Below, piece after piece: positions 4,272 to 52,921 of a DNA stretch of 64,000 nucleotides. The DNA is from Phaeosaccion multiseriatum (Eukaryota; Protista; Ochrophyta, other classes). The notes beneath the pieces were generated by a model. The model saw only the letters and a program-made list of their open reading frames with translations, was not told where the DNA came from and did not search any database. Positions within the stretch are counted from its first letter, which is position 1, and every line of letters starts with the position of its first letter. The stretch spans positions 1,054,001-1,118,000 of the forward strand of contig OZ218956.1 in the NCBI GenBank assembly GCA_965112735.1, in the 5' to 3' direction. A program made the position numbers and the translations under genes.

Positions 4272-7200
4272 CTACCCTGCAGAAAACGCCGTAGCGTAAC
4301 AGCGAGAGAGACACTCAACAGAGGCATGTCGATAGTCGCTGCCCTGGGAGTGCCGCTCCAGCTGCTCATCTCCCAAGCTCCACATCTCAAAGTGGGTGTG
4401 AGCACCTATCGAAGCGCTTGCTTTGCCACCCTCACCACCTGCAGCAGCCACAGAAACCGCGGGCCCCCCTATCCAATGCTCAAGTGTCCGCTCCCACGCC
4501 ATGTTCCCAGGGGGAGGGTAGTCGAAGAGGTCAAGCCTCTTTTGCGGGGTTCCGAGCTGCGCCAAATAGTCTGCTCTTGCCCACCAAACGTTTCCTGAGT
4601 AGAACCAGGAGTCTTGCGGCCCGGCCATGAGATCCACCCCACACGTCACAGTCTGTGAGCCTTGTTCTTCGCCATCACCGGGCAGCAGTCTCTCAAGGCA
4701 AAGGCGGTGGTGGTCCAATGTAAAGTAGCTGAGGTAGTCTCTCCATTGTGCCGACCCGAGGTGCTCGGGTCCCCCTCTACCCTTGTTGGCGTTGAGGTAG
4801 AGAATAGAATGATTCCCGTGTCCTCTGGCGAAGTGCCAAACACGCATGAGCACGGGAAGCTCTTGCAACAACAGCATGTGTGGAAAGCACTCGACCTCAA
4901 TGTCAAGACTCTCCGCAGAGCTGCGAAAGGCGTTTTGATGCGAAATCACCTCTTGACACTCGGTAGAGCCCTCCGCTGTTACCACAAGAAAGACTTGCAG
5001 GTTCTTCACCGTCTCGGGAAGGCCTGAGGCAGTTATGCGACTCAGAAGCTCGCTGAGAATGCCCTCCCAACCAGCCAACGCCCTCAGGTGCAAAAACACG
5101 GCGACTTCGGCCGCAGATACAGCGGCAGCAGCAGCAGCAGCAGTCCGAGGAACGTGCTCACAAACCTTCTGTTCCTCTCCTTCTGATGAAGGGCTGCAAC
5201 ACGCCGCCCTCTTGACGACTCGTCTTGGGGGAGAAGCCTTGCCTTTGTCGCCTACCTCAGCCCCAAGAGACTCCGCCTGAGCCTGGGCCAGAGACGTGTC
5301 CCTAGAGAGAGGCACAGTGAAAATCTCTTCCCCCAAATCCTCCTCCTCTGCACCTCCTTCGCTTGCTTCAGTCGCGGCCTTGAGCACTGTATCTGCCTCT
5401 CTGTACAGCTCGAGATGATCTACCCAGCCTTGGTCGTCATGAAAGTATGAGGGGTGCACTGCAAAGGAGTTCTGCACATAGCAAGTGGTCAGTTGCTCTT
5501 CTTTCACGAGCATCGTCATGGGCGCTTCGTCGTACGGATGACTCCTGGAGAGGGAGGGGTCGAGAGAGGAAGCGAGCGAGGAAAAGGGCTGTGAGAACTA
5601 TCCCGGCGAGGCGGTGCCAGGAAACCAAGCTCAACGTCATGTCGTGAAGGGGAGGGGACTTCCGAGCCAGACAAGGTATCCCGTTTTTAAAAAAAAGTCC
5701 GTATCGTAACCATAAAACGTTCTCACCGCACAACTCATCACACAACTCATACCGCCCCTCACTCTCACCATGTGTACCAGTCCGCCCGAGAGAGGACCTC
5801 GAAGACAAACTCCACAGAGGCCATCCACATGCTGTTACAAAAGTAGGGGAACTCGTCCCAGGCTGCAGCATAGAGGCGGTGCTCCTGCTCGGTACGCTCC
5901 TTCCTTGTCACGTTGCGGTGCCTCTCAGTCTCCTTGTGCTGCTGCTGCTCTTCCTTCGTCTCGAAATCTGCCCATTTCCCTCCCGTTCCACCCCTCCTCA
6001 GGAGCTCCGTCTCCATAAGTCGACGGGCCGCATCTCCCATCAAAGTCGAGCACTCCCTGTTGAAGCGCACAGGATGTATGCCCCCAGCGAACGCTCGCAC
6101 GTTGCCTGGCTCAAGGATGTGAGGCAAAGCCCTCTTGACCCGACCGTAAAATGCCTTTGAGTCAAAGTCTCTCCATGGAAAATCGCCGACCCCGATCTCG
6201 ACGTTAGCTTCATTGGGCAGGTCAAACTCAAACTCAGCCTGCGCTTCGTCCGGTTGCTGTCCAAGCCTCAGGGCGGCCAAAACATCCTCCGGTAGCACAG
6301 TTCTGGCGAAGCAGTCTCGCACGCCTACTGCCTCGTCCTCAGAGAGGAAGCTTTCGATGAACATGTCCACTGTGGGAATCCCAGTCGAGAGCGCTGGGGC
6401 GAGGTAGGCACACCTCAATGGGTGCGCTCCTCCTCCACCCTCCCATCCCTCGCTCCTTCCGGCACCATCGCCATTCTTTGGGTGCCTTTTTGGTCGCTCA
6501 TAGCTCACAGACGCTTGTTGCTCGATCATGAACGCAAGCGCTTCGGGAGAGATGATGATATCATCATCGACGCTCATTATGTGAGAGTAACCCCTCTTGA
6601 GACTCACATCGAAGGCTGTAAAGATCTTGCGGAGATAGTTTCCATCCATGGGTTGGGACGGCACCTCCTGCCCTGCCACAAGGTGCAACCCTCCCCACAG
6701 CGCGTGCCCTACTTCCGCCAGCCCCTCCAAAAACTTGTGCTCATCGCCCTCCCAGGTGCTAAGGACGTGTAAGCGGACGCGCTCCACCACAGGGCGATAC
6801 TGCGGTGATCGGTAGAGCAGGAGGAGCGCCCGACAGAGAACGGGGTGAGTCTGAACTAAGTTGAGTCGCTCCACACCCATCAGGAGAAATATGCCAATCT
6901 CTGGCGCCTTGTCGCCGACCTCGCCCACCTCCCTCTCTTCCTTCACCCCAATAGTAGGCCTAGCCTCCCCCTCGACAGAATCACACTTCTCGCGAAGGTA
7001 CTGCTGACTCCTGCTGCTCCTGCTATTGATCGGGGTGCTCTCCCTTTGCTGGACATTGCCGTTCTTCCCTTCCGGAGCGTGCCCTTTGCTGTCCAACGGG
7101 TCGACTAACGCAATCGCTGCATCATACACGTCGTCGCTTACAAGCGTCAGAAGCGCTGACGAATGCCTCTCCACAAGCTCCTGAACGCCATTTAAGGCTT

Positions 7201-8023
7201 CGCTTTCTTCGTCACTGCTCTCTCTGTCTCCCAATACTCCCAGCACGGTCCGCGCATCTTCAGTCTGTCGGTACCGCTCGAAGAGTAAGGCAAGCTGCAA
7301 GGGCACCTCAATAGACTCTTGCGGCAGGAAGTGTGCCGGCAAGGGGTGACACCAATCTTGTCCCGCCTTCTCGACGAAAGGGTGGGGCGCTCGAGAAGTG
7401 GCGCTCGTCAAGAGCACTAGTCCGGTCGCGCAGTTGGCATACAGTTGTCGCATCTTCTCGCCCACGGACTCATCGCCGGGGCTACCCTGCTCTGCCCCTG
7501 CTCTGTCGTCGCCGTCTCCAGACATGGGCTGCAGCAGGGGTGGTAGGAGGTGTATACAAGTCCAAAAGGACCTCCTTGCGGCCGCAATGAGTGCGAATTG
7601 GTCATACGCACCACTATAAATGTCAGGGTAGGATCTGAGGCAGGCAGCGCCGTAGTTATAGAAAGCCGTTCCTAGCAGTAGAACGTCCCCCTCCTTCATC
7701 GACGGCAATGACCCCGCCACCTCCACAGCTTCAGACACCATCACTCCAAAAAAGCGCAGAGCACAATCGTACTTTCCTTCGGAGAGGCATGAGCCAGCGG
7801 CCTCAAAATCTCGATGCTTAACGATCCGCCGATGTTCCTCGTACGAATCCACATCGTTCACCAGCGAGCTTCGTAGGGCACTGGCGCCGGCACTTCCCAG
7901 AAAAGGCGCGTCTTCCAGAGCACCAGAAGGGCGGGAAAGCCTCGCCGCGCGGGCAGACCTACCAAGATACAGGAGCAGACAAGCCATCGCCGCCACCTTC
8001 GTTCTCTCCCGATGCCGCTTCAT
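4272..8023 (-). CDS. Secreted multidomain protein: TPR-like region, DxD GT-A-like domain (paralog B) and a C-terminal YL..KG/SGNxWW domain of unknown function
   Basis: Hydrophobic N-terminus (AAMACLLLYLG). Exon 8023-~5770 has SVDDDIII, LSTGIPT, GIHPVRF and PYFCNSMW. Exon 5544-4272 continues WSHPYDE...FAVHPSY, then ELPVLMRVWHF, YLNANKG, WRDYLSYF, FYSGNVWWARADYL and EHWIG. Confidence 0.75.
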
Positions 8024-8289
8024 AAGAATACCAAACGAGCTCAGCCATTAGAGCGTTGCGAGCTCAAAGGATGGAAGGAAGAGCAAGCCTGGGAAGGCTG
8101 GTGGGATTTGGAGGCACATGGGCCGTCAACTGCCGGTGTAAGATCTTCCTCGGAGGGGTGATGAGTGTTTTCTTGAAGAGCCCTTGACTTGAGGATGCAG
8201 TAGTAGCAGTAGGAGCCATAGCTAATTCTTGCGAAGGCGCACTTATTCATATAAGTGCTTAGGAGTCTGCGGAGCTGAGACCAAGGGGG

Positions 8290-10041
8290 ATGAGGTTGCA
8301 TTTTCAAGCTGGTGTGCTGCTACTGCTCACCGTCCTTTTGCATGGCGAGAGAGCTCGTGGCGGCGAAGTCATTCCAGCAGACGGCTCTGCCTCTGGACAG
8401 GAGTACACCCTCCTGCATGATCTCGCCACCCAGTTCAACACTGACAAGGTGCAGGGGGAGAAGGGGTTCAGTGAGTCCTTGCTTGATGGGCCTTAGCTAC
8501 CCCTTACTTTTTCGGTGTGTGTCAACCTGCCTCAGGCTGCCCATGGCTTTGCTCCCTTGTACGAGGAGCGGTTTGGTCATCTTCGCCACACTCCGGCAGC
8601 CCTCCTTGAGGTGAGTGCGAGTCACTCTGCAGCCACCAGGCCTGCCCATCCTTTCCTGATGAGGCCGAAGCTGACGCAGCGGGCAGCGTGGGGCCTTTTT
8701 CGAAGCCCGATCTCGCTGAATGTCTCTTCTCCCCCCCCCCCCCACCTACCCACTACTGCTTCGCTCCTCCTGGCATGTCTTGCTTATGGCGGTTTGTCTG
8801 ATATCGGTTCATGGGCTCTTGCTTGTTGCTTGTTGCCCGAAGGTGGGGGTGTGGCAAGGCGCGTCGCTGAGCATGTGGCACGCCTTCCTCGATCACGCAG
8901 AGGCTCGGGTTGTTGGTATCGACCACTTCAAGGGGGGGCGTTTCAATCCGGCAGTGTGAGTTGTGCTCAAGCGCGGGGGAAGGAGGGGGAGCGATCCGAT
9001 AGAGCAAGAGAATTGCATCTCGGAGGAGCTGTGTTCATATGTCGTTCCTTATCTGTCGTCATCCCTTCAGGCACATCGAAGATGAAGGTAGGCGCTTTGT
9101 GTCCGTCGAGAGTCAACGCTCGTCACCCGCTGATCCTGCCCGAGTACTGCGGGCATACCAATACGGAGAATTACCACATGGTAAGGACTGAGAGGCTCAC
9201 TCACATTCACACTCACAGAGTTTTCCCCGCTGACCTTCTAACCCCCCTCTTCCCTACCTTGTAATACTCTTACTCTTTTCCACAGGTCAAGAAGTCTATA
9301 TGGTGGACCAGAGCGATAGGAAAGAGCTCGCTCGCTTCGTCTCTCTTCTCCAAAGGTCAGTGAAACACCCACGCCGCCTCAGTCTCCCTTCTTTGCTTAA
9401 CCGCTGTCCCCCCCGGCTCCGACAGGACAAACTCCGCCTTCGATGTCATTATCGACGACGGCAGCCATGTCATGAAGGACCAACAGCAAACGATGGGGAT
9501 GCTGTTTCCCTTCATCAGGCCCGGGGGCATTTTTGTGATGGAAGACACGACAACCTCGCGGCCCCCATGGACAGGTGGAACGGCAGCTCCCCCCTCTAGC
9601 CTCTTCTGCCTGAGCGTACCCCAGGACTAGATGCTTGACGCTGGCAGCGCTTACGCAGTAGAGCTGATGCTCCGAATGAATTCTCCCCCCGCGTCATGTC
9701 CTTCAGGCTATGGCGTGTTGCCAGACTCGTCCAATAACTGGTGGGCCCTGGTGAAGACGTGGCAGAGCACGGGAAAGGTGGAGTCGATGTACATGACACC
9801 AGAGGAGATGGCGTACATGACTCAGTGGACCGACAGCATGGTGAGTGACCACCGGTAGGCGGAACATACTCGCTCGCACTCGCTGACGTACGCTAACACC
9901 AACGCTGTTGATCTGTCACCTTCCCTTGGTCACCAGGAGTGCTTCATTCTCGTGGAGGGCAAGTCCGAGACGTGTCTCGTGCACAAAAAGGCCACCGTTG
10001 GAGGGCCAACCAGCAACAACCTCGAACAACTGGAAAGATAG
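8290..10041 (+). CDS. Secreted MycE/OleY-type SAM-dependent sugar O-methyltransferase, copy 1 (~8 exons)
   Basis: Signal peptide MRLHFQAGVLLLLTVLLHG. Spliced motifs TDK|AAHGFAPLYEERF, LLE|VGVWQGASLSMW, VVGID, DQSD, FDVIIDDGSH, IRPGGIFVMEDT. Last exon ECFILVEGKSETC ends at TAG 10039-10041. Confidence 0.85.
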
Positions 10042-10056
10042 GATAGGATTGTACAT

Positions 10057-11762
10057 TCATTCAATAGAGTCTCTTTTATGAAGGAGGCATGTTTCGGACT
10101 GGCCTTTCACCACCAGAAAGCATTCCTGTGAGGGGTGTGAGGGGCCAAAACAAAAGCGAGAGAGAGCGCTAGTGTTAGTTACAGGTGGGTCTGGCTGAAT
10201 AGGTACGGTCCACACCATGTGCGACTTACAATCTTGTCAACCCAGCGCGTCATGTATCGCTCCTCCTCGGTCGTCATGTAGATGGACTGAATGGTGCCTG
10301 CCGCCCGCCACATGTCCATGACGGCCCACCAGTTGTTGCTCAGGTCCGGAAGGAGGCCGTACCCTGACAGAAGGGTGGCAGGGAGGCAAACCTGAGGCAC
10401 TCTGCCCCTTGTCGATGCATAAAAATTTTCCGTCCCCCTCTTTTGATGACGGGAATCATCCCTTGGAACCTCTCCTACCTGTGTGTTTTGGGTGTGACGT
10501 ATGCGTGTCTTCCATGACGTACACGCCCCCCGGCTTGACGAAGGGAAAAAGCATCCCCATCGTTTGTTGTTGGTCCTTCATAATGTGGCTTCCGTCGTCG
10601 ACAATAACATCAAAGGATGACTCCGTCCTACTTGCATGGTTCGGAGAGGGAACACTTGTTGGGCTCACTCCTCATTGTGGACTGCTCGGTACAAGAGCAC
10701 GCCTTACCTGTGAAGCATAGCCGTAAAGCGCTCAAGGTCGCTCCTTTCTCCCTGGTCCGTCATGTACACCTCTTGGCCTGTTCAGGTGGCCAAGCCATCA
10801 CACCATTGTGAGTCAGAAGGGGGGGCGAGTGGACAACGCTCTGATATGAACCCTCCCCTCGCCGCAACATTCACCTTTGGGAAGCTCCCCAAAGTGATAG
10901 GCTCGGAAGAATACCAGGGGATCGAGTGGCAATGATGCCACACTATCAACTGCCACGAACATTGTCCCTTCCTCCTCAAGGTAACTGTGGATAGCGGCGG
11001 AACCCGTGGTGGAGAGAGAGAGAGACGGCGGTCAGGGTAGAGGGCAGATCTACAAAAAGGTGCAGGAGGCAAGGACTTACACGGGCTTGGTCTTTAGGTA
11101 TCCCTGGAACTTGTCTACACCAACGATTCGAGCATCCGGGTGGTCGACGTAGGCGTGCCACATGTTCAAAGAAGCCCCTAGAAAGACCCCCACCTATTGG
11201 CAACGCGCCGAAAACATGAGATGGGAGAAAGGGGAGAGCGATAAGAGCGACAGCAGAAGACAGGGCGAGCTGCCAACTAAGCCCAAAGAGCATAGCATAC
11301 GCACCTCAAGTAGGTCCGTGGGCTTGTGCCGAATGTGTCCAAGCTGGTCCTCATAAATGACAGCGTAGCCATGACTTGCCTTCGGGAGTGTCAGAGAACA
11401 AAGTAATGAGATGGATAATATGGTCATATCTGATAGGACTAGGACCTGTTGTTTCGGACCTTGTCTGTCTTAAACTGGACTGCGAGGTCCTGAAGAATGG
11501 TGTGCTTGTCTGCCGCCTCGCCAAGCAAACGCGCAGCAGCATCAGCGCCCTTCTTTGTCTTCTCCATCCACTCCTCTTCTGAGTCTTCTTGGCCGTGCGA
11601 GTACTTCGAATACTGTGCCCGTGGTGCGCCATACTTGTTGACATCTCCTTCTGCTTCTACAGCGGCGCTGGCTCCTGCCACTGCTGCTACGCCTACAACA
11701 ACAACTATTCCTGCTAGCCTTCTCCATCTTCCACCGCGGCTGCTCCTGCTCACACCTCTCAT
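10057..11762 (-). CDS. Secreted or membrane-anchored MycE/OleY-type sugar O-methyltransferase, copy 2
   Basis: Hydrophobic anchor LAGIVVVVGVAAVAGASAA. Motifs TDK|ASHGYAVIYE, LLE|VGVFLGASLNMW, FDVIVDDGSHIMKDQQQ, VKPGGVYVMEDT. Last exon ECFLVVKGQSETCLLHK, with stop at 10057-10059. Most intron positions match copy 1. Confidence 0.85.
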
Positions 11763-11919
11763 GTAATTTGTTTCTTTTTTTTCCTCTTTTATTTTTACCA
11801 GATTTTTACCGTCGGCATCGGTGTGCAGGTGTTGGTTCTACAGGAGGAGGAAAAGGAATTTTACTTTTATCCCCGCCCCCGCCCCCTCCCTCGGCGACTC
11901 CCAACAAGGTCTGTAGGCA

Positions 11920-12963
11920 ATGGCGCTGTGGCGGCTTCTCCTGATTCTGCTGGGGGTACTATATGGAATAATCCACACAAGAGGGTTGCAGTTTAGTGGC
12001 CTGGTTAGGGGAACATCAGCCGGAAAGGCTGGAGGTGTGACCGAAAGAAAAGAGAGGCTTAGCAGAAGAAGCTTCATCGCTGCTGCTTCTGCTCTGCCGA
12101 TAGGTCTCCTTCGCAGCAAGAAGGCTTCTGCCACAGGTGTGATATACGAAAATCATGTTGTGAAGGCTTTCCTTTTTCCTCTCTCACCCTCTAAAATGCT
12201 GTGTCCTCTCTATCAAGCAACAGGCGCGGAACCCCCGGCTGGCACAGCAGAGAACGTGCGAAAAGTCCTGGAGAGTGACTACGTCACCAAAAAGTATATG
12301 CTCACTGGAGATCTCACGCGCAGGTTAAGATTTGAGGCGGGAAAGCCAACGTGATTGTGGGTGGCAGAGCTCGGCCGCCCAGTGTTGCGACCATTATTTC
12401 GTCGGTTCTGTGATGGCCGGCTGACGCAATGCGCTCTCCGCCTCTCTTTATTCTCGACAATGCAGCATCTACAAGCCCGACTGCCGCTTCACTGACCCCA
12501 CCACGGATGTGAGCTCTGTGGACAAATACGTAGCGGCCGTGAAGATCTTATTTGACCCTGCCCACTCTCAGCTGGACCTGCTGTCGCTGAAGGCCATTGA
12601 TGAGGCGCACATTGAAGCCAAATGGAGGCTGGGTGAGTGGAACTGGGCTCAAATACTGTTAAAGCGTGTTCTTGTTCCCTTCACATGCTGGATACCGCTA
12701 GTACCCCTCGCTCGCACTTTATTCACTGCCTCGGCGCACACGTCTTCAATGATGCCAATTTTTTGTTCGTGTCCGACACGTTGTTGTCACTGTTCATAGG
12801 CGGCTACATCAAGTTTCCATGGCATCCGTATGTCAAGCCGTACGAAGGTAGCACTGTGTTCACGTTGAACAAGGAAGGACTCATCCAGTCACACGCGGAG
12901 CAGTGGGGAATCTCTGCTTTGGATGCCTTGGTAGCGACATTGAGGCCGACCAGGGGGCCATAG
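11920..12963 (+). CDS. DUF2358 (SnoaL/NTF2-like) protein, probably plastid thylakoid-lumen targeted
   Basis: Signal peptide, then a Tat-like LSRRSFIAAASALP...ASA. Spliced core YMLTGDLT..IYKPDCRFTDPT...KWRLGGYIKFPWHPYV...HAEQW is typical of DUF2358. Confidence 0.75.
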
Positions 12964-13525
12964 CTGCTACAGTTAGAGGGGGAGACCATGGTATTAGATA
13001 GTTGTAACAGCAATTTTATGGGGGGTAGAAGAGAGAGGGAGAGCGATACAAGAGGGATACACAAAGATAGAGAAAATGGAGAGCAGAGAGAGCGACGTGG
13101 TAACGCGCCAATAGAATAAATATAACCTTGGCCCGTGGGAGTGTAAGACGATTGGGGGGGGGCGGGCGGCGCAGAGGTGCAGGTGCAGGTGCAGGCTGCC
13201 TTTGCGCGTGACTTTTGGCAGGTCTTGGCCACGCCTGCGGCGGTCCTATCCGAGGCGGACCGGGAAGAAAAGCTTCCCATACTGAGGGCAAGTTATCTCC
13301 CGTACAAATAAGATGAAAGAGTGAAAAGTGAAAAGAAAAAGAAAGAACAGAGTTGAGTGCCATCTGTGCGTGTTGGTGCTCCAAAACCTCGAGACCGGTG
13401 AGCTTTACTTTATAAAAAAAAAAAATTAAAAGAAAGCCCAGCAACACGACAAAACCACCACCCAAAATGATTTAGGCTTGCTTTGCAGAAGAGGCCGAAG
13501 AAGGAGAGGGAATCTTCTGAGAACC

Positions 13526-15574
13526 ATGCTTGCAGCCTTCGGCGTCAAGCTTCTGGTGCTCTCATTGGCAGCATTGGGAGTTCAGGCTCTGGAAGAAGTG
13601 GGTGTCGGAGGGGCTGACGTTTCCAAATCAATATCTCTGTCATTCCGCATAGACGGTCAGCCCGACTGGTATCGAGATGTGGTTGTTGACGGGGAAGGAG
13701 AGCCTCTTTATAACCGGTTTGTGACCAGTTGGTGAGTATTATTGAGAACAAGGGAAGAAGAAAAAAGGGAAAAGAGATAGGAGGTAGAATGATGCTAATG
13801 CGTATCCCTTCCTCTCCTCATCCTTTCCTTACCAGTTCCAGTATAATGGCGGATGATATTGGTGACTGCGTGATGCATTGCTTTGAGTTGGTTGAGCTCA
13901 AGTACGGTACAGACGACCCGGCACTGCAGCCGGAGGAGGCTTTGGTCTTGGGTGCACTCCAACGCCCCGACACTGTGAAGGTCAGTCGTGCTTTCGCCCT
14001 GTCGGTTCCCCACATCTTTAATCGACTAAGTGCGTGTAGTTTGCCCCGGCCTCTTGTTCCCTAAACGCAATGCGCAGGAGGGCAGTCCTTCGAAGATCCA
14101 CTCAGACGCCTACCTGAATCTCGCGGTCGGCGCCATCACGGGAAAGCTTTATCCCGAGGACACTCTCCGCAATGGGTATGAGCAGAGCAAGTCGAACGAT
14201 TACCAAAGGTATGTCGTCCTTTCCCCCAGCCACTCCCTATTCCTGATTGTACTTGCCTCACACCAATTCTCAAACCTGCTCCTGTGCCACTGGCGCCGCC
14301 GCTCCCGATCCTCTCCCCTTCGCTGCTCTGAACAGAGACAATGGGGTTGACTGGCCCACGCTCGGCTACACCATGGTGGGCACACACCGCACCCAGCTGC
14401 TGCGCACCGTACTCGAAGTCGTCATCAGCGAGGGGATACCGGGGGACTTCCTCGAGGCGGGGGTGAGTGCGGTGCTTGACTTTGCTTTGGCCTCCCATCC
14501 CCATGGAATTTAAGTGCGTCATTCGTTCTTTAAAGTTTCAAACTGCGCGAATCGTAGCCATCATCTCTTTCCTCCGTCTTGCTCAAGCCCTTCTTGTTTG
14601 TTCCTCCGAAAGGTGTGGCGCGGAGGCCAGAGCGTGTTCGCAAAGGCCTTACTGGACTGGTACGGGGAAGGGTCACAGCGCACGGTGTTCGTGTGCGACT
14701 CCTTTGAGGGGCTGCCCCTCCCCTCCAATCCTGAGCAAGATTCGGCCGTATGGAGCGAGATGGACTACCTGCGGGTGGGCCTGCCGCAAGTCAGAGACGC
14801 CTTCGATCGGATGGGTGTATCCCAGGAGAACGTACAGTTTGTCAAGGGCTTCTTCCGTCACTCCATGCCCGAGCTACGGAAAGTTTGGCCTGGAGTGGTG
14901 TTCTCCATCTTACGGGTACGTCGGAGCAATGGATGGGGGAGCGAGGTCGTTAGCCACACGTACATACTGTCACCTCCGATGAGGGAGCAAGCTGGCAGGA
15001 GAATATGCAGGCCTACTTGGCGGGTGTTAGAGCATAGTCAGCCTTCGCCCTGGCTGGGTCGGGGGAAGCGATGGCCCTCGAGCAAAGGAGGGCCCCTCAG
15101 AAGCCCTGCCGTGTTCGATTCTTAATGACGCGGTCCAATTACCTTTATTCGGTGTCTGTAAATGTCTCATCAGTTGGATGGAGACATGTTCGAATCGTAC
15201 TTCGACTGCCTCTTCAACCTGTACGACGCCTTGAGCATCAATGGGTTTGTTCTCGTCGACGACTACGTGGTAGTGGACGGACGAAGGGCCGTCACCGAGT
15301 TTCGCAGGTGAGCTGCACAAGCGACAAGCGCGCTTCTCCTCTCCTGCATCACTGAACAGGCACGCTCGTTTCGCGCAGGCGATCTAATTCGCTCTCTCCT
15401 CCTACCTCCTCATCCTCGGTTATGTTTCCGGTGCTCTCCGACAGGATACACGGCATAACAGACACTCTCTATCTCACCAAAGACGGCATGGGCGCCTACT
15501 GGAGGAAGAGCAAGGAGGTGCAGCTCGACATGGGGCACTACTTCGAGGTCATGAAGCTCGAGTCCAGCAGCTGA
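13526..15574 (+). CDS. Secreted TylF/MycF/NovP-family sugar O-methyltransferase
   Basis: Signal peptide MLAAFGVKLLVLSLAALGVQA. Motifs DWPTLGYTMVG, IPGDFLEAG|VWRGG, VCDSFEGLP, FVKGFF, SILR|LDGDMFESY, VLVDDY, AVTEFR, GAYWRK. Stop TGA at 15572-15574. Confidence 0.9.
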
Positions 15575-15969: not shown

Positions 15970-16378
15970 TCACTTCATCCTTGATCTTAAAAGAAGCTCC
16001 GCACCATCCTTCGACGTTGATAACCCATGAGCTGAGGCAGCGACATAGACTCCCACTCCCACCCTTCCGTCTTGCATGAGCGAGCTGTGCGTCACACCAG
16101 GGCCCCCGAGGATCGCCTGCACTTCCAGCGGGGGAGAGGCAAGCACCAAGCCGAGTCCCAAAACGTCTTCCCACGCGCGCTTAACGTCAAAGTACAAGTC
16201 GTCCACCACGAGGACGTGCCAGTCTCTGTGTGAGACAAACAAGACCCCAAAACACAGGTGCACCGATTCATCGGGGGGGAGGAGGGCCTTTCGTGTAAGC
16301 GGACGGTTCGCAAAGACAAAAGGCTGACCCAAAAGCAGGACGCTGAGTGGGTCAGAGAGGTTGGCAAAACCCGTGCTT

Positions 16379-16416
<38 letters not shown>

Positions 16417-17990
16417 CACTTGCTGGCGAGGTCCTTGAAGTTCACAATGTCCGCCAAGGCCGTGCTGTACGAATGGCCGCCGTCTACAAAGATCATGTCA
16501 CACATGCCCAAAGATTCACTCTGTTCACTCCGCTCTTCCCCGGGCCCGATCTGCAAGGTCCGCTTCATCTGCCTCACCTGCTCGAAGAGGGTGGAGCCGC
16601 GCGGAAGGCGAGAGGGGTGGAAAGTAATGGAGAAGAGAGGGATGAGTGGGAGGGCGAAGAGAGGAGGGCAGGAAAGATAATTGTTCTGTTGCTTGCCCCA
16701 GAATACACGGCAAATTATAAACACCTCCTCTTTATGAGGAATGTTCGACCCCTGACACACTATCGCCCACATTCTCGATAGCGCGCTATCGGCCGCGGCC
16801 GTCAGGGGTCGAGAATGTGCGCTTTGGAGATTCCCAAAGTCTCTCCTAAAGGGCGTTCCAACCATTTTAAGCCTAGCTCCATTCACATCTACTCACCAGG
16901 GATGGGATAGAGAGCTCGGAGTCGCCAAGGACGAGGTTGAAGTCTGCATACGGGAAGCTCGATTGAATGTAACGGTTTGCAACTTGGGAATACCACCACG
17001 ATCCCAAGTCGAAGCTCAGAACGTGCACGGAAGGGTCGGCCGTGAGGTAGCTAAGGGCTGACCTGTAGAGTGTAAGGGCAAAAGCGATGTAGTGATGATG
17101 GATGTGGTTCACCGGAGAAAATGAACTATGCGGGTAGAGCATCGTTACGCACCTTCCCATGTTGAATCCAACCTCGCAGATGGTCTTGACTTGGGGAAGG
17201 GCGGCAAGCTCTTGCAACAAAAACACTTTGGCGGGGAAAGAGGTAATGTCCCCCTCGTATCGCCTGTCTGTCTGCGGATGCTCGGCAAGATGTTCGTCCA
17301 TGGTGTTGCGAAGAGCGAACACGTGGTGCAGGAGCTGCGCCTCTCGAGAACAGGTCACGCACCCAGCAGCTACTGAGTCTTGAGAAGTCCCTCTTCCCTC
17401 ATCACCTAGAGAAGGCGGGGATGCTCCCTCGACTCTGGGCCGGTAGCATTTCGCCACGTTATCAGACTCGTCGCAGCCGGAACCCTCCTCTCCACAATAC
17501 CACTCAAGAAGCTGCATCACACATATCTCAAGCTCTTTGTCGACCACCAGAGCATCTCGGCACGAGGCCAAAGCCACCAGATGGGGGGGAGAGGCGCGAG
17601 GCCACAAGGGCGTTGCCGCGCTGCTGTTGCTCGCGAAGTTTCCGTCCGCCGAGGAAGACATGAAGCTAAACTCTAAGTTCACTTCCTGCGCAAAGGACAA
17701 GTGCACGACGTGTAGAATGCGGGCGGCTGCTGAGGTGCGAAGTTGGAGGCTACAGATGCAAGGGTCACGGAAGCTCATACCTTCCACAAGCCACCCTCCA
17801 ATTCGTCGCTCCCTTCTAAGACCTGAGTGTGATGGGAACACCAAGAAAGAGGCAGAGGTCTCCGCATCAACAACAAAAAAGAGAAAGAGGATGTATCTGT
17901 GCTCTCCTTCCCTCAACACTCACATTTGGTGGATGCCATGCACTGACTCCCACGCACGCCAACAAGTGGTAAAATAGGGTTGATGTATAC

Positions 17991-17992
<2 letters not shown>
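15970..17992 (-). CDS. Secreted class I SAM-dependent methyltransferase (Methyltransf_24-like)
   Basis: First exon MYTSTLFYHLLACVGVSAW followed by a GTGAGT donor. Core KTICEVGFNMG|SALSYL, VLSFDLG, LVLGDS, CDMIFVDGGHSY, VLVVDD. Confidence 0.8.
16745..16812. mobile_element. 68-bp MITE-like element (family A, short copy) inside an intron
   Basis: 12-bp TIR TCGACCCCTGAC...GTCAGGGGTCGA flanked on both sides by GAATGT. Internal CACATTCTCGATAGCGCG is the reverse complement of sequence in the copies at 34.8 and 38.3 kb. Confidence 0.75.

Positions 17993-18024
<32 letters not shown>
17993..18024. repeat. (AG)n microsatellite abutting the start codon of the 15970-17992 gene
   Basis: Visible dinucleotide run. 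Confidence 0.9.
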
Positions 18025-18025
<1 letters not shown>

Positions 18026-18380
18026 AGTTGGTTTAATCGGGGGGTTCGAGAGAGGAGCAGCTCTCTCTCAAACTATGTTGGCAGGTAAAAGATACGATTT
18101 AGAGAACCAACACGCCTCCTTCGGCAGGAGAAGTTTTTCCCTCCTGCCGATAAAGTCTCCTGCCGACAGCCGACACAAACACCTAATATTCATACACACC
18201 CGGCAGCCTCCTTCTTCTCGCTCCACGGCTTGATTGCGTCCACGCTCTGTACGAAGAAGATGCACCTCCAATTCGTTTCTCGAAGGGGCAGTCACGGCGT
18301 TTGACGAGGACGCTGTCACAGTGCTGATCGTTTTTACAGCAGGCTTCTCTGTGACAGAAGGGGCGATGTGCATTGGCAAC

Positions 18381-35778: not shown

Positions 35779-36876
35779 TTAGGTGAGTTCTTTCCGCCTG
35801 GCGGGAAGGGTCATCTTGTAGCGGGGAGAGGACGGGTCTTGATTGAAGAAAGCCCTAAGCCCTTTCTGTTCAACCTCGCAAGACAAGCACCACTCTGAAT
35901 ACTCGAATCCCCCCTTCCCCTCTCCGATATCGGAGTCTGCCTTTTCACCTTGACAAGCACTCCTCAGCAGGTAAGTCTCGCTGTAAAGTCGCTCGACCTC
36001 CCGTTCGGAGTCATGCACAAGAACGACACTGTCCCCATGGGCCAGACGAGAAGCCATGAAGATGGAACTCATGCGCCCTGGTAAGAGCCAAGAGTAGCGA
36101 GAGAGAGAGAAAAATCACAACGCGATGGACTGGTGTGGGTACTTGGGAAAGCATGAGTGGCGATGGCATGCCAGGTACAGCGAAGATGCATTTCATTCTC
36201 CCGTTCTCCCACCCTCCTTACCTGGTGATTCACTTTTCCAGCCCGTTGGCCCATCCACCAGCACCACGTCCCACTTGTTTGGCTCAGTCACAGACAAGGG
36301 AAGATTGGGAAGATGCAGCTTTTCCTCGTCACCTAGAAGCAGGCGAGCCTGAGAGAGCTGTGTAGAATACTCTATCACGTACACCTCTTTGCAGCCAGCC
36401 TCTCGAGCCATTGCCGCATACTCGGCGTTCTCCTCGAGGATAACCGTTCGCCCTCGACTATTGCCGTGGCACCAGAGAGGAGAGTCATATCCAGCACCCC
36501 AGACGAGGACTCGCGGCTCCGCATAGGATAGAATGGCCCGCATGACCATGTGAACCTCGTCTCTAGACAGTTGAATCTTCCCTTCCGCTGCCTCGTACAA
36601 ATCCATTACTGTGGAAGCCTCTCCTCTGAGCATATCGATCTGGCTCCTGATGGCAGTCTCACACCCCCTGCCCTCTACCCGCCACTTGGAGCAGAAGTGA
36701 GCAGCGACTTTTAGACTGTCGTCACCTGACCATGTCACCATTACAACCGTTGAACTCCCCCCTTCTCCATCCTCCATCTCAACCTCAAAAGCCAGCTCAT
36801 GCCCCCCCCGCCAGGTGGAGCTCGCCGGCCAACAAAGCAAACTGGCAGCGAGCAGAGCAAGCAGCAGCGTCATCAT
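35779..36876 (-). CDS. Secreted DUF579-family (glucuronoxylan 4-O-methyltransferase/GXM-like) polysaccharide methyltransferase
   Basis: Signal peptide MMTLLLALLAASLLCWPASS. Motifs QLSRDE, VLVWGAGYDSPLW, NSRGRTVILEEN, WDVVLVDGPTG...PG|RMSSIF, VLVHDSEREVE match the DUF579 pattern. One intron at ~36078-36221. Confidence 0.85.
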
Positions 36877-38866: not shown

Positions 38867-41800
38867 TCACTTGTACGGTGCCAAAGGCGCAAGGGCCGGC
38901 TGAGCGGCTTGCCACAGCCCTTCCTTGAGCGACTGGGCGAAGCTACTGCTCAGCACCTGCGGGTGCCAAGAGAAGTACTTGTCCAATGCACGGGGCTGCA
39001 GCGGCGGGGCCGACACCATCTCCAGCCACAGAGTCTCATTGCGCGCCACGCTCGCCACCCGCTCAGCACACGCGCGCAATTGACCAGCCACGTCGGCCTC
39101 TCGCCCCCCTTCAGCACCCCCCCCCCCTCCTCCTCCACAGTTTATAAAGGCCGCCGGATTGAAGATGAGGTCGACGTCTGCAGGCCCCCAGTAGACGGGC
39201 ACCGCGGCAGCCAGAAAAGCATTCACAATCTTCTCGGTCCAGTACCCGTCCTGGACGTGACTGTTCTCAAAGGCCACGACGAATCGGTAGGGCTCGTAAG
39301 CCTCCACTGCCGAGTCCAAGTACGTCGAGTCGAAGCGCCCCGCCAGCCTAGGCCCGGCATAAGCGCCATCATCATTCTCGTCCCTTTTGAGGTGATGCTG
39401 CTGCTGCTGCTCCCCCTCCTCTTGCTCGCCTGTGCGGCCACTGCGCTGTCTTTGGCTTCCTCGACACGGCCCGAGTGCATATGTATCCGGCACGAGAGTG
39501 GAAAGCTCATCGAACATGTGCTCACGAATGGAGCGGTCGCAGCGGGAGTAGAGGTAGGCTACATTGCGGCGTTTGAGAGGCAGCACCCGCTGCAGCAAGG
39601 AGTCTCTGGACACCGCAAGGTCAGAGGGAGTATGGACCAACCGTTCCGCGAAGGAGGCTGCCGCCACGGACAGGTGAATGTGCATTGTGCCCCTTGCGCC
39701 ACCACGTGCTGTCGGTGATGCCCCGTCCGCGAATCGGTGCAAAGGAGGAGGGCTGAGAGAGGAATCGCTTGAAGCGTGCAGCACCACAGCCGCTCGGGCG
39801 AAGGAGGACACGTCCCATGGCTCACCGCAGACCATCACCACCAAGGCTTCCGGGTGGTCACGCTCCGCCATGTCCCGCGCCGTTTGCTGGCAATGCGACT
39901 CCCACTGTCCTCCCCCGCAGCCCCCATCCAATGCCGACAGGAGCAGAACGTGCACGTGAATGTGGGGAGGGGGTAGGGGGGGGGGCAGCATCACAACCTC
40001 CATGGAAGGGAAGGCCTCCTGCAGAGTCACTCGAAAGAGACGCGAAAGGTACGAGGCCATTGGGCTCACAGCGACCATGAGGCGCTGTCCCTGCGCCTGC
40101 CGCTGCTGCGGCTGCTGCTGCTGCTGCTCCTCCTGTCCTTTGCGAGCAGATACTGTACCCAGCACACCTCGTCTACCCTTCTTTGCAACAATTTCCTCGT
40201 AAAACTCGGCAACTCGTCCGCAGTAGTGTTGCCAGCTGGCCTCTTCCCACACCCCCTTTCGAGCATTCTCCAGAGCGGTAAGCGAGATATCCTCCTCCTC
40301 CTCCTCCTCCTCCTCCTCCTCCTCCTGAACTCCGCTCCACGCCTTCCCAGCTTCTTGCTCGGCGCTCCTCTCGAGCAGCGGTTGAGTCCCTCTCGTCGTC
40401 TTCTCCAGCACGAGCACCACTGCCGCCGCAATGCGCTCGACAGCCTGTGTCCCTTCGTTTCCGTCCATGACCCCACCTACGGGCTGCCTCGGTCCAGCGC
40501 TTCTCTCCGCTCCTCCTCCCCCCCTGACCAGCACCCCTGCGCCTCGCTTGACGGACTCCTCGTGGCCGCTCGACGCCGTCGCTACCACAGGGGTCCTGGT
40601 CAGCAGTGCTTCCACATTCCCAATGCCGTAGGTTTCCGAGGGGCTCGTGTTGATCATGACGTGGAGACTTGCCAAGAAACTCACGACGTCCTCGGTGCCA
40701 ATGTTGCCGAGAAAGGAGGTGTGGTTTGCAACTCCCAGAGTGATGGCGAGGTCCTTCACAGCAGGGAGGAGGTGTCCTTCCCCAGCCAGCAACAGTTGGA
40801 CCCGCTGACCTCCGCCACCATTGCTGCTGTTCTTCTCCTCCAGCATCTCCATCACTCGCTTGCCCACATGCAGGAACAGTCCAGGACCCTTGGTGCTGTC
40901 GACTCTGCCCAGCATGCCGAGGCGAAAGGCGCCACTCTCATCCTTGGCAGCAGTGAGGCGCGGTAGGTCTGTCAAGACGTCCGCATTGACTGTCAAGACT
41001 GGCGGGTGAATCACCTCCACAGGGCGGCCCAGGCTCTGTAGGTATGGGCCTGTGGCGACAAAGTGTGAGGGGGCCTGGAGATGGGTCGGTCGTAGGGATG
41101 GAGACGCGGGGGGCAGAGCGTCGTATTAAGTAAGGGCTCTGATGGGGAGGTGAGACTCGACACACACACACCACTTACCAGATACACCTCCACGGGGACA
41201 TCGGAGTGCGGGGAAGTGTTCGGGAGCTCCATGACACTGACGGGTACGCCAGCGAGGCGCACGAGTTCGAACAGCACCTTCTGCTCTTCGCTCTCCAAGC
41301 TGTTCGGACCCACTGCGGCGTCGAAATTGAGCAGCGCGCGTAAGACGCCCGACACGCTGTGCAGGCCCTCGCCAGAGAGCTCGTGGAGGAGAGGGTGCAC
41401 CTCAGCTACCGCCTGCTGCTGCTGCTGCTGTTGGTGGTATGAGGTGCCATGGTGGGTCAGAGGATCTCGCCTTCGAAGAAGCTCGAGGAGGTGCCGAGGG
41501 CACGACGGTGAGTAGGACACGAAATGGACAGGGACCATGAGAGCCGTCAGCTCTGCTAGGAGATCCGTCCTCCGCCTCTCGTCTCCGCTGCTGCTGCTGT
41601 TGCTGCTGCTGTCGCCATCACATTCGCCGACTTCAGAGACGAAGAACCACTCCACCTCAAAGGAGGCTCTCGGCAGGTACTTGGTCTGTAGCAGGAAGAG
41701 CTTGTTCTGACTGTGCCCCTCTAGATTGGCTATATTCAGAGGAGGAAGGCAGCAGTGAGAGAAAAATGAGCAACACGTCATCCCGATAGAAGGATTAAAG

Positions 41801-52700: not shown

Positions 52701-52921
52701 CCAGAGAGGAAGTCTCCCAACCCCTCCACCTGCACTATACCGCAGGGAAGGTCCGGAGAAGGGCGGCCTGGGAACGACTCCCACGCCCGAGCTGCGGCAC
52801 CCGAGGTGAGCGGCACCTCCAGGTAACCCACCGACGGAGGAGCAGCTTGTGCCTGTGTGGCGAGAAGACCCAGCAGGACGAGGGATGCGCGGACTCCCAT
52901 CCTGAAGTAGGGCACAGCCAT
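49715..52921 (-). CDS. Secreted GT4-family (GT-B) glycosyltransferase with a large N-terminal region
   Basis: Signal peptide ASLVLLGLLATQAQA. Motifs FFGRLSGEKGPG, FPSLGCETFGM|VGPEAMSQGLPVV, ELIRHRENGLLV. One intron at ~50000-50130. Confidence 0.88.

What the first reader, a model, noticed from the sequence alone, without database searches (positions are those of the whole stretch)
8290..15574. Two MycE-type plus one TylF-type methyltransferases: the actinomycete deoxysugar permethylation trio, retargeted to the secretory pathway
Seen: two DDGSH/MycE-OleY-type genes and one TylF-type gene lie within 7.3 kb, all with signal peptides and many introns. Known: rhamnose 2',3',4'-tri-O-methylation in spinosyn (SpnI, SpnK, SpnH) and elloramycin (ElmMI, ElmMII, ElmMIII) uses two OleY/MycE-family enzymes plus one TylF-family enzyme. 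Inference: this alga may sequentially methylate a terminal 6-deoxyhexose (fucose or rhamnose), possibly the fucose added by the cluster's GT10 domain.
Basis: partly seen in the sequence, partly recalled or inferred. Interest (0 to 1): 0.78.

Follow-up and report, generated by a model that had tools for sequence, protein, structure and literature searches.

The report
Three secretory sugar methyltransferase genes
This alga has three real, intron-split genes side by side for metal-dependent methyltransferases of two bacterial sugar-methylating families, each starting with a secretory-type signal. They are good untested candidates for the unknown enzymes that methylate algal glycans, but they are not a transplanted actinomycete enzyme trio.

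Summary
Gene A (8290-10041, +, 8 exons, 304 aa) and gene B (11762-10057, -, 8 exons, 340 aa) carry the DDGSH catalytic core. Their only clear solved relatives are MycE and TylE. Gene C (13526-15574, +, 7 exons, 391 aa) is a TylF-family enzyme with its metal-binding motifs intact. All three start with the most hydrophobic segment of the protein.

- A and B are inverted tandem duplicates: 59% identical, same exon lengths, sisters in the tree.
- They sit in a protist-only clade (MMETSP transcript, Triparma), apart from the actinomycete MycE/TylE clade.
- They lack MycE's N-terminal auxiliary domain and its Tyr208 loop.
- Many stramenopile algae have TylF-like proteins, several with N-terminal membrane anchors. 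Gene C's own place in a quick tree is unresolved.
- An unrelated gene lies between B and C.
- The GT10 domain is 23 kb away.
- Two Triparma relatives have no TylF gene nearby.

My reading is luminal glycan O-methyltransferases in a glycosylation-rich neighbourhood. Substrate, order of action and expression are untested, because only DNA runs were available. Joined spliced models were sent to no search tool. The scan's other notes on this stretch are first-reader notes only.

The parts
8290..10041 (+). Gene A: MycE-like (DDGSH) SAM O-methyltransferase, 8 exons, 304 aa, N-terminal signal peptide
   Evidence: The model has GT..AG introns and an open frame. Exon 6 matches MycE and TylE. tblastn hits of protist relatives cover exons 2, 3, 6, 7 and 8.
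10057..11762 (-). Gene B: inverted paralogue of A, 8 exons, 340 aa, Arg-rich N-terminus followed by a 20-residue uncharged segment (signal-anchor type)
   Evidence: The model is. B is 59% identical to A over 257 residues without a gap, and exons 2-7 have identical lengths. A and B are sisters in both trees.
9426..9574 (+). Gene A exon 6: catalytic core with the DDGSH motif and the downstream ED pair
   Evidence: It aligns without gaps to MycE chain residues 286-340. The counterparts of Asp275, His278, Glu303 and Asp304 are all kept (numbering from PMC9275233).
10479..10627 (-). Gene B exon 6: the same catalytic core
   Evidence: It is 76% identical in DNA to A exon 6. DDGSH and the ED pair are present.
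10042..10056 (.). 15-bp gap between the stop codons of the convergent genes A and B
   Evidence: Coordinates come from the two models. The 3' untranslated regions must overlap.
13526..15574 (+). Gene C: TylF-family SAM O-methyltransferase, 7 exons, 391 aa, signal peptide plus about 90 residues without a family match ahead of the TylF domain
   Evidence: The model is. PF05711 matches exons 4-6. Solved relatives are 5i10/4cdz, MycF and NovP. Exons 1-2 have no Pfam match.
15174..15307 (+). Gene C exon 6: DGD and DD metal-binding and base motifs of the TylF family
   Evidence: It aligns without an internal gap to the NovP segment that holds DGD and VDDY.
8024..8289 (.). 266-bp head-to-head spacer between gene A and the 752-aa ORF at 5768-8023 (-)
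   Evidence: ORF list and the gene A model. It may be a shared promoter; this is inferred only.

Best explanation
Genes A, B and C encode metal-dependent, SAM-dependent O-methyltransferases that enter the secretory pathway. They most likely methylate hydroxyl groups of sugar residues on a secreted or cell-surface glycan in the ER or Golgi lumen.

A and B arose by a local inverted duplication within a protist-specific branch of the MycE-like catalytic domain. They have diverged enough (59% identity) to differ in position or acceptor. C is a divergent TylF-family enzyme.

Shown here: gene structures, family membership, kept catalytic residues, the duplication, and hydrophobic N-termini.

Inferred: the luminal location, a sugar acceptor, and any cooperation between the three enzymes.

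By analogy with MycE and NovP, the mechanism would be as follows. A divalent metal held by the conserved Asp/Glu residues binds hydroxyl groups of the sugar. The His of DDGSH (in A and B) or the second Asp of DGD (in C) removes the proton from the target hydroxyl, which then attacks the methyl group of SAM.
For: Family and active site:
- Searches give the family matches.
- The counterparts of Asp275, His278 and Asp304 are kept in A and B.
- DGD and DD are kept in C.

Link to glycans:
- The nearest relatives of A and B include a Triparma protein that fuses a GT8 glycosyltransferase to this domain.
- Bacterial relatives are fused to GT2, FkbM or UDP-glucose dehydrogenase domains.

Secretory entry:
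- The N-termini of A, B and C are hydrophobic.
- The Phaeocystis and Triparma relatives, and several algal TylF-like proteins, have N-terminal signal or anchor segments.

Neighbourhood:
- A GT4+GT10 protein at 38870-41020 and a GT4 at 50075-52921.
- A GXM/IRX15-type polysaccharide methyltransferase match at 36196-36876, E 1e-19.
- A further Methyltransf_24-like piece at 16419-16601.

Background:
- O-methylated sugars are known in algal N- and O-glycans and in diatom walls.
- A 2020 review says that none of the enzymes involved has been characterised (PMC7773692). A 2025 review names no methyltransferase (PMC12507850). See also PMC4584364.
Against: - There is no RNA evidence, so the starts, and with them the signal peptides, rest on the first ATG of each model.
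- No signal-peptide predictor was run.
- None of the three has an ER-retention tail, so A and C would be soluble and could be secreted to where there is no SAM.
- A luminal SAM supply needs a transporter, and none was identified here.
- All characterised members of both families act on small-molecule glycosides or glycolipids in the bacterial cytoplasm, not on glycoprotein or polysaccharide glycans.
- The A/B-C adjacency is not seen in the two Triparma genomes checked.
Confidence: 0.55

Rival explanations
1. The three enzymes form one assembly line that methylates O-2, O-3 and O-4 of a single terminal 6-deoxyhexose (fucose or rhamnose), as SpnI/SpnK/SpnH and ElmMI-III do. The fucose might be the one added by the GT10 domain in the window.
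For: - The composition, two MycE-like enzymes plus one TylF-like enzyme, matches the bacterial trios at superfamily level.
- Sequential methylation of one terminal deoxysugar has precedents: fucose in M. tuberculosis PGL-tb (PMC3594219) and rhamnose in PBCV-1 glycans (PMC9614988).
- MycE-like and TylF-like genes are immediate neighbours in 5 of 80 viral and 3 of 80 bacterial loci.
- A and B have diverged to 59% identity, which leaves room for different regiospecificity.
- A GT10 domain exists in the window.
Against: - A and B are lineage-specific duplicates, not counterparts of the two bacterial MycE-type enzymes.
- They lack the Tyr208 loop and the auxiliary domain that shape the MycE acceptor site.
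- The GT10 domain is 23 kb away, with other genes in between.
- An unrelated gene separates B from C.
- No TylF gene lies near the Triparma relatives.
- The window has at least two more candidate methyltransferases, so the number three is arbitrary.
- No deoxysugar evidence of any kind was obtained.
Confidence: 0.15
2. The enzymes tailor a glycosylated small molecule, such as a polyketide toxin or a glycolipid, rather than a protein- or polysaccharide-linked glycan. This is what their characterised bacterial relatives do.
For: - All solved relatives (MycE, TylE, MycF, NovP) are natural-product tailoring enzymes.
- A haptophyte genome paper read macrocin-O-methyltransferase homologues as a sign of macrolide production (PMC4580454).
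Against: - No polyketide synthase or deoxysugar-pathway match was found among the window's large ORFs that were scanned.
- The neighbours are glycosyltransferases and a GXM-type polysaccharide methyltransferase.
- Relatives are fused to GT8 or GT2 domains.
- The N-termini are of the secretory type.
- The TylF-like family is common in diatoms, Nannochloropsis and brown algae. As far as I know (not checked here), macrolides are not known from them.
Confidence: 0.1
3. The three genes have no shared function. A and B are neighbours only because they are tandem duplicates, and C lies nearby by chance or through regional co-expression. Each acts on its own acceptor.
For: - The duplication fully explains the A-B adjacency.
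- An unrelated gene lies between B and C.
- There is no conserved synteny in Triparma.
- Both families have many copies across algae, which raises the chance of accidental neighbours.
Against: - Adjacency of the two families recurs in viruses and bacteria at 4-6% of loci. My rough estimate is that a TylF gene turns up by chance only about 0.1-0.2 times in this much bacterial DNA.
- The window as a whole is rich in glycosylation genes.
Confidence: 0.2

Closest known systems
MycE/MycF (mycinamicin) and TylE/TylF (tylosin) enzyme pairs
   Same: - One MycE-type and one TylF-type metal-dependent SAM O-methyltransferase are encoded close together.
- The A/B core keeps the Asp275, His278 and Asp304 counterparts, and C keeps DGD and DD.
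- In those pathways the two enzymes methylate neighbouring hydroxyls of one 6-deoxyhexose in a fixed order. This last point is from my own knowledge of the MycE and MycF papers, which the tools could not fetch.
   Different: - A and B have no N-terminal auxiliary domain and no Tyr208 loop.
- They carry a 35-45-residue insert encoded by exon 4 and a different C-terminal segment.
- They sit in a separate protist clade.
- They have signal sequences and introns, and the acceptor is unknown.
Rhamnose permethylation trios SpnI/SpnK/SpnH (spinosyn) and ElmMI/ElmMII/ElmMIII (elloramycin)
   Same: The composition is the same at superfamily level: two MycE-like enzymes plus one TylF-like enzyme. ElmM1, ElmM2 and BusK are grouped with MycE in PMC9275233.
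   Different: - A and B are sister duplicates and are not related one-to-one to the bacterial pairs.
- Action on rhamnose or fucose is untested.
- SpnI, SpnK, SpnH and the Elm sequences themselves were not available for a tree.
Chlorovirus PBCV-1 A064R domain 3 and A061L
   Same: Two SAM methyltransferases methylate O-2 and then O-3 of a terminal rhamnose of a protein N-glycan in a eukaryotic alga-virus system. The second enzyme needs the first methyl group (PMC9614988). This is the closest functional analogue for glycan capping.
   Different: - Those enzymes are viral and cytoplasmic, and are described only as class I SAM methyltransferases.
- I could not fetch their sequences, so homology to A, B or C is untested.
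M. tuberculosis Rv2956, Rv2955c and Rv2954c
   Same: Three methyltransferases methylate O-2, then O-4, then O-3 of one terminal fucose, in that order (PMC3594219).
   Different: - The acceptor is a bacterial glycolipid.
- I did not test which families these proteins belong to.
Plant GXM/IRX15 (DUF579) Golgi polysaccharide methyltransferases
   Same: These are luminal, SAM-dependent methylation enzymes acting on a polysaccharide sugar in a eukaryote. A match to this family lies in the same window at 36196-36876.
   Different: It is an unrelated methyltransferase family and is not part of the three genes.

Membership tests
MycE/TylE/OleY sugar O-methyltransferases | Homologous catalytic methyltransferase domain | tested here: met
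   A exon 6 against PDB gives MycE 7e-11 and TylE 2e-9. The profile A1 gives MycE 3e-32 and TylE 1e-31, with the next match at 0.012.
MycE/TylE/OleY sugar O-methyltransferases | Metal ligands Asp275 and Asp304 and the base His278 | tested here: met
   The gap-free alignment of A exon 6 to MycE keeps DDGSH and ED. The same holds for B. The residue list is from PMC9275233.
MycE/TylE/OleY sugar O-methyltransferases | Conserved Tyr208 in the loop after the LEIG strand | tested here: not met
   Three true MycE/TylE-like ORFs (L117, L128, L135) have a 6-7-residue loop there. A, B and their protist relatives lack it. In MycE this loop holds Tyr208, by my count on the alignment.
MycE/TylE/OleY sugar O-methyltransferases | N-terminal auxiliary domain of about 150 residues (tetramer and acceptor site) | tested here: not met
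   A has 36 residues and B has 84 residues ahead of the domain, and these are signal and linker only. L128 and L135 match MycE/TylE over their whole length at 1e-83 and 3e-86.
MycE/TylE/OleY sugar O-methyltransferases | Placement inside the actinomycete natural-product clade | tested here: not met
   The actinomycete rows form their own clade (98/89*). A and B fall in a protist clade (100/99*) elsewhere in the tree. The MycE-like rows filled under half of the columns, so the deep order of branches is unsure.
MycE/TylE/OleY sugar O-methyltransferases | O-methylation of a 6-deoxyhexose | not testable with these tools
   This needs an enzyme assay.
TylF family (PF05711) | Match to the family model above its gathering score | tested here: met
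   Exons 4, 5 and 6 score 51.9, 78 and 47.4 bits against a cut-off of 23.
TylF family (PF05711) | DGD and DD metal-binding and base motifs | tested here: met
   Exon 6 aligns to the NovP, 5i10 and MycF segments that hold these motifs. The roles of the residues are from my own knowledge of the NovP structure paper.
TylF family (PF05711) | Membership of the large stramenopile algal TylF-like clade | tested here: inconclusive
   C is 39% identical to the best member. In a quick tree it sits on a long branch, weakly (81) with bacterial and viral rows.
Deoxysugar permethylation trio (Spn, Elm) | Two distinct MycE-type lineages plus one TylF-type enzyme acting on one sugar | tested here: not met
   The two MycE-like genes are sister duplicates. 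Whether they act on one sugar was not testable.
Deoxysugar permethylation trio (Spn, Elm) | Encoded next to the transferase or pathway that supplies the deoxysugar | tested here: inconclusive
   A GT10 domain lies 23 kb away. The immediate neighbour, a 752-aa ORF, has no family match and only weak glycosyltransferase-like leads.
Secretory-pathway (luminal) enzymes | N-terminal signal peptide or signal anchor | tested here: inconclusive
   Hydropathy fits in all three proteins and in relatives. No predictor was run and no transcript evidence for the starts exists.

The most novel reading that the evidence does not exclude
These genes, together with the anchor-bearing TylF-like and MycE-like families of stramenopile and haptophyte algae, are the long-sought Golgi enzymes that O-methylate algal glycans. 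At this locus, a duplicated MycE-like pair plus a TylF-like enzyme have independently assembled a stepwise permethylation line for a terminal deoxyhexose. That would be convergent with the actinomycete, mycobacterial and chlorovirus systems.
Probability: 0.15. Interest if true: 0.75.

Novelty: new variant of a known kind. Interest (0 to 1): 0.5.

Why it matters
O-methylated sugars are common in algal N-glycans, O-glycans, walls and exopolymers. [quoted passage not shown]

This locus supplies three concrete genes that can be expressed, from two families with known chemistry. It also shows that secretory-type versions of both families occur in marine protists, some of them fused to glycosyltransferases. 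That makes the question of which enzymes methylate algal glycans directly testable.

It also corrects an earlier reading that took algal macrocin-O-methyltransferase homologues as a sign of tylosin-like antibiotic synthesis.

Tried and rejected
Searches and look-ups that gave little:
- Exact-sequence look-up of the neighbouring 752-aa ORF found nothing on record.
- NCBIfam gave nothing useful on the exons.
- The word search with a 203-aa open frame of gene C found only one relative.
- The big representative search with A exon 6 found 2117 relatives, none above about 65% identity. The window's own proteins are not in the collections.
- The metagenome scan with A exon 6 found no close relative (best 63% over 43 residues), so synteny in sister species could not be tested.
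- A search of PDB with A exon 3 alone gave only chance hits.
- Papers on MycE (PMC3193595) and SpnH/I/K (PMC2832084) are not held.
- I believe PDB 4cdz/5i10 is SpnH, but could not confirm it.

RNA evidence:
- The four runs found are DNA assemblies of one sample. They show no spliced joints.

Gene models:
- For gene A exon 4 I first split off a micro-exon. I rejected that because the unsplit exon matches B's exon 4 in length and frame.
- The TTG start at 13478 for gene C was rejected in favour of the first ATG at 13526.

Plastid targeting was considered and judged unlikely. No aromatic residue follows the likely cleavage sites, and the following residues are acidic. I did not identify the organism beyond 'alga'.

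Joined spliced proteins:
- They were built only inside local scripts, for one pairwise alignment, one multiple alignment and three trees.
- All such searches were done exon by exon, by reference.

Full report
WHAT IS THERE

The window is GC-rich (about 57%) eukaryotic DNA in which coding sequence is split into short exons. I built the three gene models by reading all frames, requiring GT..AG introns and an unbroken frame, and using the two paralogues to check each other.

- Gene A: 8290-10041, + strand, 8 exons, 304 aa.
- Gene B: 11762-10057, - strand, 8 exons, 340 aa.
- Gene C: 13526-15574, + strand, 7 exons, 391 aa.

Every intron begins with GT and ends with AG.

A and B converge, and their stop codons are 15 bp apart. 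A stands head-to-head, 266 bp away, with a 752-aa intron-free ORF (5768-8023, -). That ORF has no family match and only weak glycosyltransferase-like leads. Between B and C lies another gene on the + strand (about 11920-12963). It has a weak DUF2358 match (E 0.05, below the cut-off) and is probably unrelated.

FAMILIES

Gene C is a TylF-family enzyme.
- PF05711 matches exons 4, 5 and 6 at 8e-14, 9e-22 and 2e-12, each above the gathering score.
- Solved relatives are 5i10/4cdz, MycF and NovP.
- Exon 6 keeps the DGD and DD motifs in register with NovP.
- The first 115 or so residues (exons 1-2) have no family match.

Genes A and B reach Pfam only weakly as Methyltransf_24, because each exon is short.
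- Against solved structures, A's DDGSH exon finds MycE (7e-11) and TylE (2e-9) and nothing else of note.
- A profile of relatives plus the window's exons gives MycE 3e-32 and TylE 1e-31. The next matches are a TylF-type enzyme at 0.012 and CmcI at 0.04.
- The alignment keeps the counterparts of Asp275, His278, Glu303 and Asp304. A 2022 paper lists Tyr208, Asp275, His278 and Asp304 as the conserved active site of the family that holds MycE, ElmM1, ElmM2, OleY, TylE and BusK (PMC9275233).

HOW FAR THE MycE LABEL GOES

From the bacterial genome scan I obtained true MycE/TylE-family proteins by reference. An Umezawaea ORF matches MycE at 2e-83 over its whole length, and a Nocardia ORF matches TylE at 3e-86. 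Aligned with these, A, B and their protist relatives differ as follows:
- they lack the N-terminal auxiliary domain of about 150 residues;
- they lack the 6-7-residue loop after the LEIG strand, which in MycE carries Tyr208;
- they carry an extra 35-45 residues encoded by exon 4;
- they have a different C-terminal segment.

So the catalytic core is MycE-like, but two defining features of the family are not met.

RELATIVES AND HISTORY

A and B are 59% identical over 257 residues without a single gap, and exons 2-7 have the same lengths. They are inverted tandem duplicates.

In two maximum-likelihood trees they are sisters (100/97* and 100/98*). They sit inside a clade of seven (100/99*) with an MMETSP transcript, two metagenomic proteins and two Triparma proteins. 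One of the Triparma proteins is a 1298-aa fusion with a GT8 glycosyltransferase. The actinomycete MycE/TylE-like rows form their own clade (98/89*) elsewhere in the tree. Those rows filled under half of the columns, so the deep order of branches is unsure.

The best 120 hits of the word search contain no named MycE or OleY. Instead there are many 205-255-aa single-domain methyltransferases from metagenomes and bacteria. Some are fused to GT2, FkbM or UDP-glucose dehydrogenase domains. Relatives are also common in viral contigs (487 confirmed) and across many bacterial phyla (548 confirmed).

Gene C's family is common in stramenopile algae. Proteins of 330-420 aa occur in Skeletonema, Pseudo-nitzschia, Cyclotella, Nannochloropsis and Ectocarpus. 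C itself is divergent, with 39% identity to the best of them, and its place in a quick tree is unresolved.

Homologues of macrocin O-methyltransferase in haptophytes were noted in 2015 and read as a sign of a tylosin-like antibiotic (PMC4580454).

TARGETING

In each of A, B and C the most hydrophobic stretch of the whole protein is at the N-terminus.
- A and C look like cleavable signal peptides.
- B has an Arg-rich start and 20 uncharged residues, like the signal anchor of a Golgi type II enzyme.

The Phaeocystis-type relatives have signal peptides, a Triparma relative has an N-terminal anchor, and several algal TylF-like proteins have clear N-terminal anchors. Secretory targeting is therefore seen in several protist relatives of both families checked, not only at this locus. 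I had no signal-peptide predictor and no transcripts, so this remains an inference.

DO THE THREE WORK TOGETHER?

For:
- The two families are immediate neighbours in 5 of 80 viral loci and 3 of 80 bacterial loci. I estimate roughly that this is well above chance.
- The window is rich in glycosylation genes: GT4+GT10 at 38870-41020, GT4 at 50075-52921, a GXM/IRX15-type match at 36196-36876 (1e-19), and a further Methyltransf_24-like piece at 16419-16601 (3e-4).

Against:
- The A-B adjacency is explained by duplication.
- Another gene separates B from C.
- None of 32 further loci has a TylF gene near the MycE-like gene. These include the Triparma and Thalassiosira genome loci.
- With at least two more candidate methyltransferases nearby, 'three' is not a natural unit.

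EXPRESSION

The only public runs that hold the stretch are four DNA assemblies from one sample. They cover the introns and show no spliced joints. Expression and the exon models are therefore unconfirmed by RNA.

COMPARISON WITH WHAT IS KNOWN

The closest mechanistic models are the MycE/MycF and TylE/TylF pairs and the Spn and Elm trios. For capping of a glycan on a protein, the closest case is PBCV-1 A064R domain 3 followed by A061L on terminal rhamnose. For tri-O-methyl fucose, it is Rv2956, Rv2955c and Rv2954c of M. tuberculosis, which act in a fixed order.

VERDICT

The deoxyhexose assembly line is an untested analogy.

RULES FOLLOWED

- The joined spliced proteins were used only inside local scripts for alignments and trees.
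- All database, structure-library and family searches were made exon by exon by reference, or with database relatives.

Noticed in passing
window 10042-10056: The stop codons of the convergent genes A and B are only 15 bp apart. Their 3' untranslated regions must overlap on opposite strands, which could give antisense pairing between the two paralogues' transcripts.
   Followed up: no
window 15973-17919 (-): A further intron-split gene just downstream of gene C has a Methyltransf_24-like piece with a DGGH motif (16419-16601, E 3e-4) and a following VVDD segment. It may be a fourth SAM methyltransferase of yet another type.
   Followed up: partly
window 36196-36876 (-): This ORF matches PF21729 (IRX15/IRX15L/GXM, the plant Golgi glucuronoxylan methyltransferase family) at E 1e-19. 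It is a candidate polysaccharide methyltransferase of an unrelated family in the same neighbourhood.
   Followed up: no
window 5768-8023 (-): An intron-free 752-aa ORF with a hydrophobic N-terminus and a DDD motif stands head-to-head with gene A, 266 bp away. It has no Pfam match. Its feature-based look-alikes are glycosyltransferase-like proteins of giant viruses and phages, at scores below 0.9, so they are leads only.
   Followed up: partly
window 11920-12963 (+): The gene between B and C, head-to-head with B at 157 bp, has a hydrophobic start, an RRSF twin-arginine-like motif and a weak DUF2358 match (E 0.05). It is probably a plastid or lumen protein unrelated to the methyltransferases.
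   Followed up: partly
window 13200-15574: In the four DNA assemblies, genes A and B lie on one long contig. The gene C region is instead broken into pieces of 160-400 bp with variant letters and higher summed depth. This suggests two diverged alleles or a second near-identical copy of gene C.
   Followed up: no
L049, L011, L002, L018, L032 (viral); L092, L128, L152 (bacterial): A MycE-like and a TylF-like methyltransferase gene lie within about 1.3 kb of each other in these loci. The pairing therefore recurs outside actinomycete antibiotic clusters, including in viral contigs.
   Followed up: partly
P0164 (L081 10001-14087), P0002: Triparma columacea has a 1298-aa protein joining a GT8 glycosyltransferase to methyltransferase domains that include this DDGSH type. 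Cafeteria roenbergensis has a 1255-aa protein with four tandem copies of the domain.
   Followed up: partly
window about 16380-16420 and 17990-18070: Dinucleotide repeats, read as runs of ERER or SLSL in translation, flank the gene downstream of C.
   Followed up: no
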